DNA from: Malacoraja senta
Taxonomy: Eukaryota
Assembly (NCBI GenBank): GCA_038087875.1
Contig: CM075988.1
Coordinates: 11,966,001 to 12,030,000, forward strand
Reading direction: 5' to 3'
DNA: 64,000 nucleotides
The stretch's first letter is position 1. The number at the start of each line of letters is the position of its first letter. The position numbers and the translations under genes were made by a program. Shown here one piece after another: positions 1,104 to 62,739 of the stretch. The notes under the pieces were generated by a model. It saw nothing but the letters and a program-made list of their open reading frames with translations. It did no database searches and had not been told where the DNA came from.

Positions 1104-3879
1104 CTATTTTGTTCTGCAGATTTGCTGTGATAGGAATTGAGTGAGAATTAGTTGACTATAGATCTGCAGTTCTGTGGACTGTGGATGCTTAGTGCACTCG
1201 ATTTAGCAGGCACTTTGGGACACCTTTTAAAGTTCAAAGTTAAGAATAGCACAACATTACTGAAAGTGCATCGATGTACTTCGATTTTTTTCCCTCTCTC
1301 TCTATTATACCTCGTTTTCCCTTTAAATAGCATCTGAGAACTCTATTAGATATTTCACCAGACATAATGTTTGGATTTTGCAGAGGGCTTCAATAAATTG
1401 TTCTATCCAGCATCCATTTTGGTGTAATTAAAACAATGTCGAGATATCGTAATTTCCCCCCCTAATATTTAATACCTCCGTGAATGGCAGTTCAGAAGTG
1501 CAGGGATAAGGTCAAAAAGGCATTGGGTCAAAGAGTAAGTTTTTGGAGCTGCAAGTTTAAGTATCATTCATTTCATAACTTCCCTTGTTTCAAACCTTGC
1601 TTTACCCTTTTTTGGGGGGTATCGCAGGATTAGCAAGTTTGAAGTCTTAGCTAATGTAAAGCACAGAGAGTAAAGGTTAACAGGGCTAAAATAATGGATG
1701 AGAATGCGCAATACAGGCAACCCCCATGTTACGGAGTGGTCCATAGACAAAATGAATTTTAAAATTATTTTTAAATTATGAATATTTTAATAATCAGTTT
1801 TGTATTCATTTATTCCATATTTTTGCTAAAATTCTGTGAGAGCCAATTTTATTCAGTGGCTCAAAATTTTGAGTCACGATTTGCAAATTTGGTTAGGCCA
1901 AATTATCCATCACCTGACCAGCTGTAACTTGGGGGTTGGCTTAAATACTAAGTGCAGATAATTTTTTTTAAATATATACAATGTTCAACAAAGTGTTGCT
2001 GTAATATCTTTTATTCATGGCTGTATGCCATGCAAGCCCAGATTAGGGACAAATGTCTCGGACAGCAAAAAACAGAGCTATATTAAGTGGCCCTCTATTG
2101 GGTCCCATTTTTACTGAACTTAATTTACACATATGATAGCCTACATTATATTTCTAATTTCATTGATCTTTTGTGCTTTCTTTACTAATTCATCCTCACT
2201 GTACATGGGGAGCGGGAGGGGCGATGCTATTATTTAGCTGCTTGCTGCTTTATTTGTCTCATTCACTTTTTTTGATTTCTTGTTGACTGGATAACTATTG
2301 GCAATATCTGTCATTTTTGAACCAGCCATATACGAACTCCCAGGTAGCAACTGTGAGCTTTTAGTTGTAATTCCTTTTCATGCAATTCCACCTGCCATCC
2401 TTTCTGTAAAGGTAGAGCACCCGAGAGATCTCTCCTCTTGGTGAATCAATTTGGTGATCCAGAATACAATTCTACTGTGTCACCTGTGCTTTTGCAATTC
2501 TTTTGTCTTGACAATACGAAGGAATAAGCAATGGCTTCAATCGCACAATGCTTACAATTGAATTATTTACACTGTTTTTGAAGGTGAATATTTTCCCTTC
2601 TCCAAAATCCAATTCCCAAAGTTGTCCTGATTTTGGATTGATGTGTTACTGAATAATGTTGCAAGAAATCCCTTGTGAGAAGAGTCTGAGAATTACTGTG
2701 TAAGAATATTAACAATAAAGTGCCTGTTAGTTATAAACTGCCTAAAATTTGGACTTCATGTTTTGTTATGCACTTTTGTGTTAATGTAAGTTTTCACAAT
2801 GTTGAGTGGTCAGCACTAACAAACTTTGACTATAAATTGCTGTTTTCAGATTGATAGCTCTCTTTCCAAGTACTGATTGTTGTCAAACCATTATCTTCAG
2901 CCCTATCTCCTGTACCATCACCAAGAGCATTTGCTCGAAGCCCATGACTGCGTCACTAAGATGGTGACCATTTACTGCTGCTGTACACCTCTCTTTCCCC
3001 AAGTTATTGGTATAAACTGCCCTTAAGGATCTTTCCTGTCCAGACTCTGAATTTTGTCCTCATCTCATTCCCCATTGATTGTCCCCACCCCCCCCCCCCT
3101 TCCAACTTTTCTTGGTGATGAATTAGACATTTTGCAGCCTTGAGTCAATTCCAATTCAATTGCTCACAATCCAACGTCCCTGCCAGTCTCGCTTTTTAGT
3201 TGCTGTTGTTAACTGTTTTTGAAGCGTATCATTCCCTAACACTTCGAAATCTGTCATTGTTACATCGCATAAAAAAACAGCCAGCACACCTTCTCTCCAG
3301 CCTTGTAAACGGCTGGCCTACTTTCAAACTTTTTCTTCTTTTAAGGCCCCAAATCACAACCTATGTTTCCAACTCACTCAGATGCTGGAACAGCACTCAA
3401 CTGAACGGTGTGACCTGGTGTCAACAACATTTGTAAACTGTTCATCTGCTGAAATCTCAAATCAATTATCTCTGGAATGAAGTTCCTTAAATCACTGACC
3501 AGAATTTTGTGACATCTCCTCAAAGTTGTTGCTAGATTGTGGCTATTAATGTTTCTGTAAACAAACACTGCAAGGCATCGGATATTTCTTTAAAGTCTCA
3601 ATAAAAATTGATTTTGTTCACTATAATTTCATTCGGAGTCATTAATAAGTGTCCTAAAGTGTTAACACTCAACCAACAAACGAGTATTTTTATGGGATAG
3701 TTCAACTGTGAACAGTTGAGGAATTCCAGACCATTGCAGGTATGCAGGCTACATTTATTTTATCCATGGTCATTAACAACAATTACCATAAGTTAATAAT
3801 TTGTTTGCTCTGATTCTCCTCACTATGTCAAATGCAAAATGTCTTTGTTCATAACAAAAGAAAAGTCGGACATTCAGCC

Positions 3880-5465
3880 CATTGGAGAGTTGCCAATGTT
3901 ATTCCTTTGTTGAAGAAGAGGTAATCCAGGAAATTATAGATGGGTGCACCTCACGTCAGTGGTTGGGAAGCTATCGGGGAGGTTTCTTCAGGATTGGATT
4001 TGCATGTATTAACAAGGGTATGATGTAATGATGAACAGTCAGTATGGTTTTATCCATGGGAAGTCATGTCTTACAAAATTAATATAGTTTTTAAGGAGGT
4101 GACAATGGTGACCAATGAGTGGATGGTGTCACATGGATTTTAGTAAGGCATTTAATAAAGTCCCTCATGGTAGGCTAATCCAGAACATTAAGATGCATGA
4201 AATCCATGGTGGCGTTGTTGTTTGCATTCAGTTGACTAATAGAAGACTGAGGGTTCTTCTGGAAAGGTGTTAATCTGACTGGAGGTCTGTGACTGGTTCT
4301 ATAGAGTTCTGTGCTGGGGCCTCTGTTGTTTGCGACATATATATGATTTGGACTTTAATGTAGATGAGTAACTTTGTAGACGACACCTAAATTGGTGGAG
4401 TTGCAGACGTGGAGGAGGATAACAGGTGCAGGAGTAGGCCATTCGGCCCTTCGAGCCAGCACCGCCATTCATTGTGATCACGGCTGATCATCCACAATCA
4501 ATACCCTGTTCCTGCCTTCTCCCCATATCCCTTGACTCCGCTATCTTTAAGAGCTCTGTCTAACTCTCTCTTGAAAGCATCCAGAGAATTGGCCTCCACT
4601 GCCTTCTGAGGCAGAGAAGTCTAAGTATATCGTGGGATATAGATCAGCTGCAGAAATGGGAAAAGAAATGGCAGAGAGAGCTTAAAATGAGCAAGTGTCA
4701 GATGTTGCACTTTGCGACATTGAATGCAAGGGAAAAGTGTGCAGTTAATGGCAACTCTAAACAACATTGATGTACAGAGGGATCTTGGGGTCCAAGTCCA
4801 CAGTTCCCTGAAAGTAGTAACTCAAAGATAAACTGGTAAAGAAGCCATGTGGCATGCATAGGTTATTGGTGTGGTATGCATTGATTATTAGACCCAGCAA
4901 GTCATGATTCAGCTTGATAGGACATTGTAAGGCTGCATTTGGAATATTGTTGCAATTCTAGTCGCCCCAATACTTGAAGGATATGAAAGCTTTGGAGAGG
5001 GTTCGGGCGAGGTTTACTAGAAATACGCCTTGATTGAAGGGTATTATCTATAAGGAGAAGTTGGGAAAAACTGATTATGTCTCTGGAACAACAGAGATTG
5101 ACGGGAGACCTGATAGAAAGAAGATAAAATTATGAGAGGCATAGATAGGGTGGACAGTCAAAACCTTTTCTCCCCACAGTGAAGATATTATGAACTGGGG
5201 GGCAGAGTGTTAAGGTGAGCAGTGCAAACTTTAAAGGTGATATTCAGGGCAAGTTTATACACAGAATAGTGGGTACCTGGAATGTGCCTCCAGGGATGGT
5301 GGTGGAGGTAAATATAATAGTGGCTTTTGAGAGACTTTTAGATAGGCACGTAGATATCCAGGGAATGGAGGGGTACGGATCATGTGCAGGCAGAGGAGAT
5401 ATGTTTAATTGGCATCATTTTCGGCATGGACATTGTGGGCTGAAAGGCCTGTTCCTGTGTTGTCC
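3880..5465 (+). mobile_element. Decayed CR1-clade (HER1-like) LINE, RT domain to 3' tail
   Basis: Broken frames give WRVANVIPL, YGFIHGKSCLT, MDFSKAFNKVPHGRL, SVLGPLLF, FVDDT; ends GGGCTGAAAGGCCTGTTCCTGTG tail. Confidence 0.9.
4419..4618 (-). mobile_element. Younger CR1 3' fragment nested antisense in the CR1 above
   Basis: Near-identical to 59650-59840 (GGAGTAGGCCATTC...CTGAGGCAGAGAA); interrupts host RT just after the FVDDT motif. Confidence 0.85.
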
Positions 5466-37215: not shown

Positions 37216-37959
37216 CTCTTAGAGAAAAAAAAATATGTAGAGGAGTAGACCATTTGGCCCTTTGAGCCAGCACTCTTGACGACTTCACTCATGACTGGTG
37301 GCCATTGGAACAACCGTGGTGGTGAAGTGCTTTGAGAGGTTACCTACTTCTCTGAGCAATAATAGGTCGATGTGGTTGTTTTTGTAGTTGATCTCCGAGC
37401 TTGATCTCCATGAGGTAGTTGGGTTTTTTAAAGACTTCTAATTTTGAACCACGTTCATCAAATTAATCGTGATCATCTGACAATTACCAGAACACAGCAT
37501 GTCTCATGAAGATTGGGGTTGTCTGCTAAAAAATACAAAGCATCACTTAGAAATCAGAAAGCTGTGATTAAGGAACACTTACTTTAAAATCCCTGTTGGA
37601 ATTCAGGAGGCCTACGACGTGGTGCCTGTGGATTTTATTAATTGCATTTGAATTCCTCCTTGATTCTGATGTACGCGATTGTAAAGATCTTTAATTGCGT
37701 CTTGCTTCAACTGCAAACTATTCAGAAACTTACTTAATCCCATGAGGCGTATTAACATAAAGGAATGTACGAGCAATGATTTGTTACAACATCAATTATT
37801 CACCTTATGGAATCAATGTAGCAATAAAGTGAAGGTGCTAAAAGATTTATTGTGTGACTTCGAAACATGCAAGAGGAGTCAGTTGTTTCTCTGTGTCCAT
37901 TTTTGGTTTGGGTTCTAATGCACGTGTTGGTGCAGTGGCGAGCACAGTGTCCCTTCATA

Positions 37960-38080
37960 TGTGTAGAGGGGGACTGCAGGTGCTGGTTTAAACCAAAGAT
38001 AGACACAAAATGCTGGGGTAGCTCAGCGGGACAGGCAGCATCTCTGGAGAGAAGGAATGGGTGACGTTTCGGATCGAGAC
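37960..38080 (-). mobile_element. PLE mini-element truncated within hammerhead stem II
   Basis: ...GGAATGGGTGACGTTTCGGATCGAGAC. Confidence 0.82.
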
Positions 38081-38128: not shown

Positions 38129-38595
38129 AATTGAATTGAATTGAATTGAATTGAATTGAATTGAATTGAATGCTGTTTATTGTCATTCAAGCCCAGGCTT
38201 GAACAAAAGTTCATTCCTACAGTTTTGTTTTACATTACAAAAAAAACACAAGACCCACACTTAACACAGTTTACATAAACATCCATCACAGTGAGTCTCC
38301 AACACCTCCTCACTGTGATGGAAGGCAAAGTCTTATCTCTTCCCTTTATTCTTCACCCGCGGTCCAGCAGTCCAACTGCAGCGTCTAGGCGAACTGGGGC
38401 TCCGGTGTTAAAGCCCCCGGCGGACGAGGGTAAGTCCCGTGGCCATTCAGCCATGCCGGGCGATGCTAGGCCCCGGCTCCGCGCCCTTCAAACCCCGCGG
38501 TTCAAGCAGTCCAACCCGCAGTCCAACTGCAGTGTCTAGGCGAACTGGGGCTACGATGTTAGAGCCCCCGGCGGGCGATGGTAAGTCCCGTCCGT
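38129..38595 (-). mobile_element. Non-autonomous retroposon with (CAATT)n tail, hairpin and internal 74-bp duplication
   Basis: (AATTG)x8 at 38129-38171, TTTATT at ~38177, 14-bp stem 38282-38322, repeats 38367-38440 and 38518-38591; hairpin shared with 61455-61494. Confidence 0.7.
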
Positions 38596-39566: not shown

Positions 39567-39924
39567 GGACGACAGATGGCGCAATGGGCTAAGTGTTCGG
39601 CTGGCAACCGGAAGGTAGCTGGTTCGAATCCCGCTTGGAGTGCATACTGTCGTTGTGTTCTTGGGCAAGACACTTCACCCACCTCTGCCTGCGTGTGAAT
39701 GTGTGTGAATGTGTGTGAATGTGTGTGAGTGATTGGTAGTGGTCGGAGGGGCCGTAGGCGCAAATTAGCAGCCACGCTTCCATCAGTCTGCCCCAGGGCA
39801 GCTGTGGCTACAGAAGTAGCTTACCACCACCGAGTGTGACTGATGAGTGAATGAATAATGCGATGTAAAGCGCCTTGAGTATTAGAAAGGCGCTATATAA
39901 ATCCCATCCATTATTATTATCATT
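39567..39924 (+). mobile_element. CORE-SINE resembling teleost AFC family, L2-type tail
   Basis: A box TGGCGCAATGG, B box GGTTCGAATCC, CORE TGTGTTCTTGGGCAAGACACTTCACCC, GCCCCAGGGCAGCTGTGGCTACA, tail TGTAAAGCGCCTTGAG..AAAGGCGCTATATAAAT..(ATT)n. Confidence 0.88.
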
Positions 39925-40461
39925 AAATACACCCAGCAAGGCCCAGTGGAGGCTCGTTGGCCATTTCACATCAGAAATTCGACATATTACAGAAGAAATT
40001 GCAAGCATATTAATCATGGATCCAATCTAGTTTTCCTTGAGTTACCACTTTATAAACTGGTGTAAAATTGTGATCTCAGATGGCATTAGCAGGAGGAAGG
40101 TAAAAAAAGCTGCTTTGTTAGATAATATGGGAAGAGCATGAATTGTAAAAGCTTTTGCTCTTCTATACAAGCTGCACTATTGACTCCAAGCATTATAACT
40201 CTGATGGAGTATGTCTTTGCCATATTAAACACACTAACATTTAGATACAATCTCAGCATCATACTGGTCTACACTATTCCTGCTCATCTCCCAAGTATAA
40301 TGAATATTTAAACATTTTATCTCTTTTAAAAATCCATCATATGTGATATTTTCCTTAAACTAAATAAATATGTTGTTAAGTGATCTGCTCTTCCATCATA
40401 CACAATTTCATATTTGAACATAATCAATATAAATGGCTGCAGTAAATACAACTTTATGTCA

Positions 40462-40680
40462 GACCAAAGATAGACATAGAGTGCTGGAGCAACTCAGCGG
40501 GTGAGGCAGCATCTCTGGAGAAAATGGATAGGTGCCGTTATGGGTCGGGACCTTTTTTCAGATCCGAATCGAAAATGTCACCTACACATATTGTACAGAG
40601 ATGGTGCCTGACCCACTGTTACTCCAGCACTCTATGTCTATCTTCTAAACCAGCATCTGCAGTTCATTTTTATTACATTT
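40462..40680. mobile_element. Palindromic PLE mini-element pair
   Basis: AAGATAGACATAGAGTGCTGGAG ... CTCCAGCACTCTATGTCTATCTT perfect inverted ends; imperfect flanking repeat TTTAT..AGACCA. Confidence 0.82.
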
Positions 40681-41405: not shown

Positions 41406-41415
41406 TGTACATGTA

Positions 41416-41527
41416 TAGACACAAAGTGCTGGAGTAACTCAGGTATTCAAGCCTTACCCAATGAATTACTCCAGCGCTTTGTGTCTATGTTTGGTATAAA
41501 CCAGCATCTGCAGTTCTTTGTTTCTAC
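41416..41527. mobile_element. Collapsed palindromic PLE mini-element (cores deleted)
   Basis: TAGACACAAAGTGCTGGAGTAA ... TTACTCCAGCGCTTTGTGTCTA; flanks CATCATGTACATGTA / CATCACGTCCATGTA. Confidence 0.78.
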
Positions 41528-42014: not shown

Positions 42015-42513
42015 TTTCTCTCCTCCCCTTCCCCTTCCAACTACATTCCCTCCTCCAGCTTCAAAATTTGCTACTCTTCAATCCTTGGGTCTTACATATT
42101 TTGCCTTTTAATCTCTGTCCACCTTTGACTCTCAAAACATTGACCTCACCTGTATCAACCAAACACCTGGACAGGCAAGCATCTCTGGGGAGAAGGAATG
42201 GGTGACATTTCGGGTCGAGACCCTTGTTCAGACTGAGAGTCAGGATAGATGGAGATTAGAGATTCTCTCCAGAGATGCTGCCTGTCCCACTGAGTTACTC
42301 CAGCATTTAGTGACTATCTTCAGTGTAAACCAGCATCTGCAGTTCCTTCATATACATCACCTGCCAGGTGTTGTCCTTCCCCTCCTCTCTTCCAGCTTTT
42401 TTTCCCCCCACTTACAATCAGACTGAAGAAGGGTCTCGACCCGAAATATCACCCATTCCTTTTCTCCAGAGATGCTGTCTGTCCCACTGAGTTACTGCAG
42501 CATTTTGTGTCTA
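42015..42513 (+). mobile_element. PLE 3' UTR and hammerhead unit with nested inverted mini-element (42170-42357)
   Basis: Insert flanked by CACCTG (42164-42169, 42358-42363); terminal core CTGAAGAAGGGTCTCGACCCGAAATATC at 42423-42450. Confidence 0.8.
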
Positions 42514-52710: not shown

Positions 52711-52825
52711 TCGCCCATGTTCTTTACAATGCCCGTCAATGTGATCTGGTCCTCTGCAATAAGATCTGGACTTCTGTTAATTCCATTCAGTGCACTTGTG
52801 CAAGCCAATGTCTGACATGGGCCAC

Positions 52826-53130
52826 ATAATAATAATAATAATGGATTTTATTTACGGGCGCCTTATACCGAGGTCTCAAGGACACCATACAGAGATTTAT
52901 AGAAAACATATAATCAGAATTTTAAAAAAATAGGTTATAAAGACCAATACATAAATCAGGGACAGAATTCCTTCCAAAAACACAAAAAAAAGAAAATCAG
53001 AAGCACAACTTGAGGAGAGAGCAGCGGCAATTTAACGCCAGCGTCCACTCCCCCCTCCGACCGCCATCTTGAACACAGACTAACAAATACAATTACAAAC
53101 AATTACATACAAAAATCATCCCCCCACATG
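52826..53130 (-). mobile_element. L2-tailed short retroposon
   Basis: Minus strand ends GGTGTCCTTGAG...TAAGGCGCCCGTAAATAAAATCC(ATT)n; internal AAGATGGCGG. Confidence 0.7.
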
Positions 53131-59630: not shown

Positions 59631-60612
59631 GACAATAGACAATAGACAATAGGTCCAGGAGTAGGCCATTCCACCCTTCGAGCCATCACATTCAATGTGA
59701 TCATGACTGATCATCCCCAATCAGTACCCCATTCCTGCCTTCTCCCCATATCCCCTGACTCCGCTATTTTTAAGAGCCCTATCTAACTCTCTCTTGAAAG
59801 CATCCAGAGGACCTGCCTCCACTGCCCTCTGAGGCAGAGAATTCCACAGACTCACCACTCTCTGTGAGAAAAAGTGTTTCCTCATCTCCGTTCTAAATGG
59901 CATACTCCCTCTTCTTAAACTGTGGCCCCTAGTTCTGGACTTCCCCAACATCGAGAACATGTTTCCTGCCTCTAGCGTGTCCAAACCCTTAACATTCATA
60001 TATGTTTCAATGAGAATCCCTCTCATCCTTCTAAACTGCAGAGTGTACAAGCCCAGCTGCTCCATTCTCTCAGCATATGACAGCATCCCGGGAATTAACC
60101 TTGTAAACCTACGCCGCACTCCCTCCATAGCAAGAATGTCCTTCCTCAAATTAGGGGACCAAAACTGCACACAATACTCCAGGTGTGGTCTCACTAGGGC
60201 TCTGTACAACTGCAGAAGGACCTCTTTGCTCCTATATTCGATTCCTCTTGTTATAAAGGCCAACATGCCATTCGCTTTCTTCACTGCCTGCTATACCTAC
60301 ATGCTTATTTTCATAGACTGATGTACAAGGACCCCCCAGATCCCGTTGTACTTCCCCTTTTCCCAACTTGATGCCATTTAGATAGTAATCTGCCTTCCTG
60401 TTTTTGCTACCAAAGTGGATAACCTCACATTTATCTGCATTAAACTTCATCTGTCATGCATCAGCCCACTCCCCCATCCTGTCCGTCACCCTGCACTCTC
60501 ATAGCATCCTCCTCACAGTTCACACTGCCACCCAGCTTTGTGTCATCTGCAAATTTGCTAATGTTGCTTTGAATCCCTTCGCCCAAATCATTGATGTATA
60601 TTGTAAATAGAT
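59631..60612 (-). mobile_element. Young 5'-truncated CR1 LINE (frameshifted ORF2 C-terminus)
   Basis: ORFs 60232-60450 (MKFNADKCEVIHFG) and 59721-60284 (LYRALVRPHLEYCVQFWSP...FFSQRVVSLWNSLP); (CTATTGT)n tail; GTATTTA at 59624-59630 and 60613-60619. Confidence 0.95.
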
Positions 60613-62083: not shown

Positions 62084-62439
62084 GTGGAATAGGCCAATAG
62101 AAATAAAGTCTTTGAATATTTCTAGAGCAGTGATTGCTAGATATTTCTTAAGCAAGGGATGAAAAGTCACGACAAGGAGTTGGGAACTCACAAGTGAAAA
62201 TACAATCAGACCAGTTGTCATCATATCAAATGTTGCAGCACACTTGAGGGACTGAGTAGCCTACTCTTGCTCCTAATTTGTATGTTTGCATGGCCTGTGT
62301 TTTTTAGGCAGAGGACAATAGCTAGTCATCCCAGATTTAAATTAATTACAAATAAGTTTACTGTTGAGTTGAGGAATTGGTCTGAGAGGGAGGCAGAATT
62401 GTGTTTCTTATTTTCTTTTGGTGCTTTTGAAATTGAATT

Positions 62440-62552
62440 CTGTCCTTGATTTGTGTTATTTAATTTATTCCGATTATGTGTTTTTTGTTTTGTTGTGATT
62501 CTATGCATTGTAAGGTGTCCTTGGGTTTTAGAAAGGCGCCAGTAAATAAATG

Positions 62553-62583
<31 letters not shown>

Positions 62584-62590
62584 TTATTCA
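62440..62590 (+). mobile_element. L2-type 3' tail with (TTA)n
   Basis: TGTAAGGTGTCCTTGGGTTTTAGAAAGGCGCCAGTAAATAAATG followed by (TTA)n at 62553-62588. Confidence 0.75.
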
Positions 62591-62739
62591 CATTTATACT
62601 AAATATCTGCTATGCACTTGAACAATCGGATCAGATGTGCTGTCAACCGAGAGTTGGAAACTGGAACCATTTGTGTTAACATTGGTAGAATGGGCCAAAT
62701 GGTCCCCTATGATTGAAATGGGTCCAGGAACACAGGACT

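What the first reader, a model, noticed from the sequence alone, without database searches (positions are those of the whole stretch)
39567..39924. Teleost AFC-like CORE-SINE in an elasmobranch background: horizontal-transfer candidate
Seen: an intact, CpG-rich tRNA-CORE-L2-tail SINE unlike the resident V-SINEs, present once in the window. From memory, its blocks GTCGTTGTG.CTTGGGCAAGACACTTCACCC, TGGT.GTGGTC.GAGGG.CC and GCCCCAGGG..GCTGTGGCTACA..GTAGCTT.CCA closely follow the cichlid/percomorph AFC SINE beyond the generic CORE. Inference: such similarity across the bony/cartilaginous fish split suggests horizontal transfer with a partner L2. L2 tails of similar form occur at 52826-52890 and 62508-62590.
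Basis: partly seen in the sequence, partly recalled or inferred. Interest (0 to 1): 0.7.

Follow-up and report, generated by a model that had tools for sequence, protein, structure and literature searches.

The report
Resident skate SINE with teleost relatives
This is one intact copy of an ordinary tRNA-headed jumping element in a skate genome. It really does resemble bony-fish elements well beyond the shared CORE block, but the pattern of differences fits long-term constraint better than a jump between fish classes, which is not ruled out.

Summary
Window 39567-39924 (+) is one complete 358-base SINE with a tRNA-like head, a CORE-like block, a short GT-rich repeat, a 98-base body and an L2-type tail.

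The claimed likeness to teleost SINEs is real and goes beyond the CORE. A copy in the wrasse Xyrichtys novacula is 75.5% identical over positions 81-354. Peptides derived from the same family occur in a cichlid and a killifish protein, and two sets of unnamed fish contigs in metagenomes carry the family.

Horizontal transfer is not supported:
- Whole-element identity is only 71-76%.
- The head is the least similar part (51-61%).
- The skate lineage is about as far from each other lineage as those are from one another.
- Similarity peaks (84-91%) in a body that folds into a closed multi-stem structure, and the differences fall mainly in unpaired positions.
- The tail hairpin and (ATT)n end also occur in other elements of this window. 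The hairpin, without the repeat, occurs in a bamboo-shark locus.

I could not measure the family's spread across cartilaginous fishes.

The scan's first readers flagged this family on several other pieces of this genome. An earlier follow-up (s1-140458) called it resident and abundant. It is an ordinary new member of a known kind.

The parts
39567..39924 (+). Whole SINE copy, 358 bases
   Evidence: Sequence. A profile built from the relatives matches 39567-39927 at E 2.8e-95. It is the only copy in the window.
39569..39643 (+). tRNA-like head. Includes the A box (39577-39587) and B box (39621-39631).
   Evidence: ARAGORN tRNA-Ala (GGC). Rfam tRNA 21.5 bits, below the gathering score. Boxes read. 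This is the least conserved module against the relatives, at 51-61%.
39647..39692 (+). CORE-like block
   Evidence: Colinear with, and 68-76% identical to, the same block in the MDSQ, ERZ and X. novacula copies. Assignment to the CORE domain rests on the literature and my memory of MIR; no reference consensus was available in the tools.
39693..39728 (+). Short tandem repeat, (GTGTGAATGT) x 3.6, inside a GT-rich linker
   Evidence: Tandem Repeats Finder. The relatives have a shorter GT-rich stretch here, 62-69% identical.
39734..39831 (+). 98-base conserved body. It is predicted to fold as an outer stem closing three hairpins.
   Evidence: 84-91% identical between lineage consensuses. Fold -43.5 kcal/mol, z -2.2; relatives z -2.0 to -2.7. 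Over the body and tail hairpin together, 95% of cells pair, against 34-61% when partners are slid.
39869..39894 (+). Tail hairpin: an 8-bp stem with a 10-nt loop
   Evidence: Fold z -3.7. Three of its eight pairs show changes on both sides across the families.
39895..39924 (+). End of the tail: an ATATAAAT motif, a short spacer and (ATT)n
   Evidence: The same order is seen in relatives and in two other elements of the window.
62500..62590 (+). L2-type tail of a different resident element (hairpin, TAAAT, (ATT)n)
   Evidence: Upstream it matches the 52.8-kb element, not the SINE body.
52822..52900 (-). L2-type tail of a different resident element

Best explanation
This is a fairly young copy of a resident skate SINE of the tRNA-head, CORE, L2-tail kind.

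**How it most likely works (inferred, not shown).** RNA polymerase III transcribes it from the internal A and B boxes. The reverse transcriptase of an L2-clade LINE then copies it back into the genome after recognising the 3' hairpin and the (ATT)n end.

**Why it resembles teleost SINEs.** Both belong to an old group of fish SINEs. The functional modules of that group (the CORE, a structured 98-base body and the L2-type tail) change slowly because only copies that keep them can keep spreading. The head has diverged or been replaced. Slow sequence change in cartilaginous fishes adds to the effect.
For: - Anatomy.
- The family is broad. A profile of its antisense peptides found 35 representative proteins. 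The named ones come from three different teleost orders.
- DNA copies fall into at least four lineages: skate, MDSQ01 contigs, ERZ contigs and X. novacula.
- Identity by module: head 51-61%, CORE 68-76%, GT-rich stretch 62-69%, body 80-90%, tail 68-79%.
- Lineage consensuses are roughly equidistant in the body and over the whole element: skate-MDSQ 75.9%, MDSQ-ERZ 78.0%, ERZ-X. novacula 71.9%.
- Differences avoid the paired positions of the body, and the tail hairpin covaries.
- Similar L2-type tails lie in two other elements of the window and in a bamboo-shark locus, so a suitable helper probably already lives in elasmobranch genomes.
- Precedents: SacSINE1 and LmeSINE1 share head, Deu domain and tail between sharks and coelacanth, and the chimaera CmiSINEs combine a tRNA-Ala head, CORE and L2 tail (PMC5499810). 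The AFC-type CORE2 is shared even with a bivalve SINE (PMC4824008).
- An earlier follow-up in this scan (s1-140458) reports the family as abundant in this fish and its relatives. I did not check that.
Against: - I found no copy in any other cartilaginous fish. The 22 kb of Leucoraja erinacea and 21 kb of Chiloscyllium punctatum I could fetch have none, though that sample is far too small to mean much.
- All named relatives are teleosts.
- The skate body is slightly closer to the MDSQ lineage (90.8%) than to the ERZ lineage (87.8%). Strict vertical descent does not predict this if MDSQ and ERZ are both teleosts, which is not proven.
- No L2 element with an open reading frame and this tail was found, so the helper is inferred.
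- The predicted fold was derived from the same sequences used to test it.
Confidence: 0.72

Rival explanations
1. Horizontal transfer. The SINE, alone, inside a Tc1 transposon or together with an L2 helper, crossed between a teleost and a batoid ancestor and then spread.
For: - The likeness runs from the CORE to the tail and reaches about 91% in the body.
- All named relatives are teleosts.
- There is no copy in 43 kb of other elasmobranch DNA.
- First readers noted copies inside Tc1 elements elsewhere in this genome.
- Large screens for horizontal transfer leave SINEs out, so such events would have gone unseen (PMC7070016).
Against: - Whole-element identity is only 71-76%, no higher than between the other fish lineages.
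- The head is the most different part.
- The skate end branch is the longest, and its placement is unresolved.
- Differences follow the predicted structure.
- L2-type tails of this form already occur in elasmobranch DNA.
- The copy studied here is a stand-alone insertion, not inside a Tc1.
- The earlier follow-up s1-140458 judged the nested copy to be a local insertion.
Confidence: 0.09
2. Shared module, not a shared SINE lineage. Skate and teleost SINEs each picked up the body and tail from the 3' end of related L2 LINEs, or from another SINE by template switching. The likeness would then be inherited through the helper, not through a continuous SINE line.
For: - In the chimaera, two unrelated SINE families share a 160-base 3' module that includes the L2-2_CM tail (PMC5499810).
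- The head is poorly conserved while the 3' half is well conserved.
- One metagenome copy (L001) begins just before the body.
Against: - The CORE block and the GT-rich stretch upstream of the body are also colinear in all lineages.
- The 3' half of the head is shared.
- No LINE carrying the body was seen.
- The two other L2-type tails in the window have a different sequence upstream, and a body-only profile finds nothing else in the window, L017 or L018.
Confidence: 0.16
3. Assembly contamination or chimera: teleost DNA placed in a skate assembly.
For: None beyond the likeness itself.
Against: - The window has no gaps.
- The 358-base element sits between sequence that shares nothing with the fish contigs except the SINE.
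- The window carries a batoid-type CR1.
- The head differs from the teleost type.
- First readers saw further copies on other pieces of this genome.
Confidence: 0.01

Closest known systems
AFC SINE (SINE_AFC) of East African cichlids, with its partner CiLINE2
   Same: - Both are tRNA-derived SINEs with a CORE-type domain and an L2-clade tail (PMC9223172, PMC4824008).
- A protein model of the cichlid Astatotilapia calliptera contains an antisense-translated stretch matching the skate body (20/30 residues).
   Different: - AFC is described as specific to East African cichlids.
- No AFC DNA consensus was available to me.
- The skate head differs from the head shared by the teleost-type copies (51-61%).
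- The cichlid peptide (67% identity over 30 residues, 36 bits) matches the skate body less well than the unnamed SRR4029434 protein P0008 does (83% identity, 48 bits).
[quoted passage not shown]
   Same: Both have a head read as tRNA-Ala, a CORE domain and an L2-type tail, and both live in a cartilaginous fish (PMC5499810).
   Different: - Its authors reported it absent from little skate, whale shark and spiny dogfish data.
- No chimaera DNA could be fetched, so no sequence comparison was made.
- The Ala reading for the skate head rests only on ARAGORN's anticodon call.
MIR, the mammalian-wide CORE-SINE with an L2 tail
   Same: Same three-part design. The tail derives from the same LINE clade (the 'SINE cousins' paper, cited in PMC9223172).
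   Different: MIR has a different body between CORE and tail. No comparison was run here.
SacSINE1 / LmeSINE1 (DeuSINEs of sharks, chimaera and coelacanth)
   Same: They are the precedent for a SINE whose head, central domain and tail stay alignable across the split between cartilaginous and bony fishes, with an L2-type tail (PMC5499810).
   Different: Their central domain is Deu, not CORE. They were not compared at sequence level here.

Membership tests
CORE-SINE superfamily | tRNA-derived head with internal polymerase III A and B boxes | tested here: met
   ARAGORN call at 39569-39643. Rfam tRNA 21.5 bits, below threshold. A box at 39577-39587 and perfect B box at 39621-39631.
CORE-SINE superfamily | Central CORE domain of about 45-65 bases matching the superfamily consensus | tested here: inconclusive
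   Block 39647-39692 is colinear with, and 68-76% identical to, the block in the teleost-type copies. No CORE consensus was available in the tools. The likeness to the MIR core is from memory only.
CORE-SINE superfamily | 3' tail shared with a partner LINE (L2 clade) | tested here: inconclusive
   The hairpin, TAAAT and (ATT)n tail is shared with two other elements of the window. The hairpin and the ATATAAAT motif, without the (ATT)n end, also occur in a bamboo-shark element. No LINE with a reading frame and this tail was found.
AFC SINE family | Family-level identity to the AFC consensus over the whole element, head included | tested here: not met
   No AFC consensus was available. Against teleost-type copies the head is 51-61% identical and the whole element 71-76%. 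The cichlid-derived peptide matches only 20 of 30 residues.
AFC SINE family | Distribution restricted to East African cichlids | tested here: not met
   The host is a batoid. Relatives also occur in a wrasse and a killifish.
CmiSINE family (Callorhinchus milii) | Sequence identity to SINE2-1_CM / SINE2B-1_CM and to the L2-2_CM tail | not testable with these tools
   No chimaera DNA or Repbase consensus could be obtained. Only the shared design is known, from PMC5499810.
Horizontally transferred element | Divergence between donor and recipient copies far below that expected from the host split, plus a patchy distribution and a tree that conflicts with the species tree | tested here: inconclusive
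   The path from the skate copy to the nearest copy is 0.34 changes per site, much the same as between the other lineages. Its placement is unresolved. Distribution in cartilaginous fishes was not measurable.

The most novel reading that the evidence does not exclude
The skate family stems from an old transfer between a ray-finned fish and a batoid ancestor, possibly as a passenger in a Tc1 element or together with its L2 helper. The near-equal distances between lineages would then reflect the age of that event and not constraint. A milder novel reading, which I rate at roughly 0.3, is that the 98-base structured body is an undescribed highly conserved SINE domain shared by cartilaginous and bony fishes.
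Probability: 0.09. Interest if true: 0.7.

Novelty: new member of a known kind. Interest (0 to 1): 0.3.

Why it matters
As a horizontal-transfer case it would have mattered, because SINE transfers between vertebrate classes are almost undocumented and large screens skip SINEs. The evidence points the other way.

What remains of interest is modest. A skate SINE and several teleost SINE lineages share a 98-base body at 84-91% identity. The body is predicted to fold into a closed multi-stem structure and is better conserved than the CORE block beside it. If it is not already catalogued, it is one more conserved SINE domain. It would be a handle on what L2-mobilised SINEs need for copying.

Tried and rejected
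- Junctions, copy number and species spread could not be read from sequencing runs.
- **First protein word search.** The skate antisense peptide alone found nothing. An alignment that added the metagenome copies did find relatives.
- **Viral contig scan** with the invariant 20-mer: no match.
- **Paper searches** for sequence strings, for the MDSQ or GCA accession, and for 'tRNA-Core-L2' led nowhere.
  - Pfam and the protein atlas gave nothing.
  - L009 carries eIF4G3-like exons (my reading of the ORF translations).
  - I treat MDSQ as teleost-like only because its SINE head matches that of X. novacula.
- **Other cartilaginous fishes.** Hypanus and Mobula loci came back without DNA. The little skate and bamboo shark loci hold no copy.
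- **Logan contig L019.** It carries the family but is no closer to the skate copy than the others.
- **A Tc1 or inverted-repeat carrier around this copy.** Rejected: the inverted repeats nearby are copies of another abundant repeat.
- **The two other L2-type tails as carriers of the SINE body.** Rejected.
- **Tree.** It has no power to show nesting with a single skate sequence and no root.

Full report
**What is there**

Window 39567-39924 (+) holds one complete 358-base SINE. Its parts, in order:
- **Head.** ARAGORN reads 39569-39643 as a tRNA with anticodon GGC. Rfam's tRNA model matches below threshold (21.5 bits, E 0.05). An A box (39577-39587) and a perfect B box (39621-39631) lie 44 nt apart. 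The Ala label rests only on the anticodon position, so I treat the parent tRNA as unknown.
- **CORE-like block**, 39647-39692.
- **Short tandem repeat**, (GTGTGAATGT) x 3.6, 39693-39728.
- **Conserved body**, 98 bases, 39734-39831.
- **Linker**, 39832-39868.
- **Tail.** A hairpin with an 8-bp stem (39869-39894), then an ATATAAAT motif, a short spacer and (ATT)n ending at 39924.

There is no target-site duplication. It is the only copy in the window. CpG observed/expected is 0.72 against 0.37 for the window. The copy keeps 11 of the 17 CpG sites of a relative's consensus, so it is not an old, decayed insertion. It is a stand-alone insertion and does not sit inside a transposon with terminal inverted repeats.

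**The host**

The window has no gaps. It carries a CR1 reverse-transcriptase fragment at 59724-60284 (-). The best named matches of that fragment are batoids (Hypanus sabinus 79%, Leucoraja erinacea 74%, Mobula hypostoma 72%), followed by bamboo shark at 63%. Earlier follow-ups in this scan call the genome a skate. The elasmobranch background is therefore sound.

**Relatives**

A scan of metagenome contigs with a 20-mer from the body found seven contigs of one assembly, MDSQ01 (GCA_002003405.1). They carry a SINE 76-84% identical to the skate copy over positions 40-358.
- *Protein searches.* Translating the antisense strand of the body gives an open frame in all copies. A profile of these peptides found eight proteins in the word search and 35 representative proteins in the exhaustive search.
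- *Named sources.* Three of these proteins have named sources, all teleosts:
  - a pentraxin-domain protein model of the cichlid Astatotilapia calliptera;
  - a hypothetical protein of the wrasse Xyrichtys novacula;
  - an uncharacterised protein of the killifish Iconisemion striatum.
- *Teleost DNA.* The wrasse DNA was fetched as L016. Its copy is 75.5% identical to skate positions 81-354.
- *More unnamed fish DNA.* Four ENA metagenome contigs (ERZ137067xx, loci L012-L015) carry another lineage at 72-79%.
- *Taxon of the unnamed contigs.* The MDSQ, ERZ and wrasse copies share one head type, so I take MDSQ and ERZ to be teleost-like. Their hosts are not named. The only sequence the MDSQ contigs share with the window is the SINE.

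All three recalled blocks are conserved in these relatives. The likeness clearly extends beyond the CORE, so that refutation test fails. The element is not an AFC member, though. AFC is described as specific to East African cichlids (PMC9223172). The skate head differs from the teleost-type head. The cichlid-derived peptide matches 20 of 30 residues.

**Pattern of similarity**

| Module | Skate against the others |
|---|---|
| Head | 51-61% |
| CORE block | 68-76% |
| GT-rich stretch | 62-69% |
| Body | 80-90% |
| Tail | 68-79% |

Whole-element identities between lineage consensuses or single copies:

| Pair | Identity |
|---|---|
| skate - MDSQ | 75.9% |
| skate - ERZ | 71.0% |
| skate - wrasse | 70.7% |
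| MDSQ - ERZ | 78.0% |
| MDSQ - wrasse | 79.7% |
| ERZ - wrasse | 71.9% |

In the body, skate-MDSQ is 90.8%, skate-ERZ 87.8% and MDSQ-ERZ 90.8%. The skate lineage is thus about as far from each other lineage as they are from one another.

A maximum-likelihood tree supports only the ERZ group. It gives the skate copy the longest end branch (0.24) and leaves its position open. With one skate sequence and no root, the tree cannot show nesting.

**Structure**

- The body folds as an outer stem closing three hairpins. The skate fold is -43.5 kcal/mol with z -2.2, and three relatives give z -2.0 to -2.7.
- On the alignment of ten copies, covering the body and the tail hairpin together, 95.3% of cells form standard pairs, against 34-61% when partners are slid. 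Five pairs change on both sides, three of them in the tail hairpin.
- Between lineage consensuses, 9 of 66 paired body columns vary against 12 of 32 unpaired ones (p = 0.01).
- The fold was predicted from these same sequences, so this is supporting evidence, not proof. It is what long-term constraint predicts. A recent transfer would not predict it.

**The tail and the helper**

- The tail hairpin, the TAAAT motif and the (ATT)n end recur in two other elements of the window, at 62500-62590 (+) and 52822-52900 (-). The hairpin and the ATATAAAT motif, without the (ATT)n end, recur in a bamboo-shark locus at L018:15747-15817.
- The two window elements share an upstream sequence with each other but not with the SINE body.
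- No L2 with a reading frame was found, so the helper is inferred.
- Tails of this form are evidently at home in elasmobranch genomes. A co-transferred helper is not needed.

**Comparison with the literature**

- SINE domains and L2-type tails that stay alignable across very deep splits are well documented. Examples are CORE, V and Deu domains (PMC5804259, PMC4824008). SacSINE1 and LmeSINE1 are shared by sharks, chimaera and coelacanth over head, domain and tail (PMC5499810).
- The chimaera CmiSINEs have a tRNA-Ala head, CORE and L2 tail (PMC5499810).
- The AFC-type CORE2 is shared with a bivalve SINE (PMC4824008).
- The large vertebrate screen for horizontal transfer excluded SINEs (PMC7070016), so the prior for such events is poorly known.

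**What could not be done**

- I could not measure the family's spread in cartilaginous fishes.
- The two elasmobranch loci I could fetch, 22 kb of little skate and 21 kb of bamboo shark, hold no copy. Two ray loci came without DNA. No chimaera DNA was reachable.
- First readers of this scan flagged the family on several other pieces of this genome. One follow-up (s1-140458) reports it as abundant in this fish and its relatives. I did not verify that.

**Verdict**

- The horizontal-transfer inference is not supported, though it is not excluded. I put it at about 9%.
- The most likely account (about 72%) is a resident skate member of an old fish SINE group whose functional modules evolve slowly.
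- A variant in which the 3' module was inherited through the helper LINE gets about 16%.
- Interest is low to moderate. The one feature worth a specialist's look is the strongly conserved, structured 98-base body.

Noticed in passing
window 59724-60600 (-): A CR1-type reverse-transcriptase 3' fragment. The 187-residue open frame at 59724-60284 has its best named matches in batoid proteins. Pfam gave no hit for it.
   Followed up: partly
window 37959-38080, 40467-40663, 41415-41514, 42178-42513: Several copies of another abundant short repeat, in both orientations. They produce the long inverted-repeat pairs around the SINE. From memory this repeat is typical of sharks and skates.
   Followed up: no
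window 52815-53110 (-) and 62330-62592 (+): Two copies of a different non-coding element. They share about 200 bases with each other, plus an L2-type hairpin and an (ATT)n tail.
   Followed up: partly
L009 (MDSQ01002599.1) 1798-2118 and 3768-4214: A contig filed in a metagenome assembly (GCA_002003405.1) carries eIF4G3-like exons about 2 kb apart. The assembly therefore contains a good deal of fish host DNA. The exons were not joined.
   Followed up: partly
proteins P0005, P0008, P0015, P0026 (run SRR4029434): Proteins in the catalogue marked SRC, which I take from memory to be a soil reference catalogue, are antisense translations of this SINE family. P0008 shares a 12-residue stretch with the skate copy exactly. 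The run therefore holds vertebrate DNA of unknown origin.
   Followed up: no
protein P0036 (UniRef100_A0A3P8NXK1, Astatotilapia calliptera): The first 60 or so residues of this pentraxin-domain protein model are an antisense SINE translation. It is either an exonised SINE or an annotation artefact.
   Followed up: no
L014 384-1937 (-): A 518-residue open frame rich in repeats ending in NQE[VL]L[ED], with no Pfam or atlas match, lies in an unnamed fish contig.
   Followed up: partly
window 38129-38171: A perfect (AATTG) x 8.6 microsatellite.
   Followed up: no
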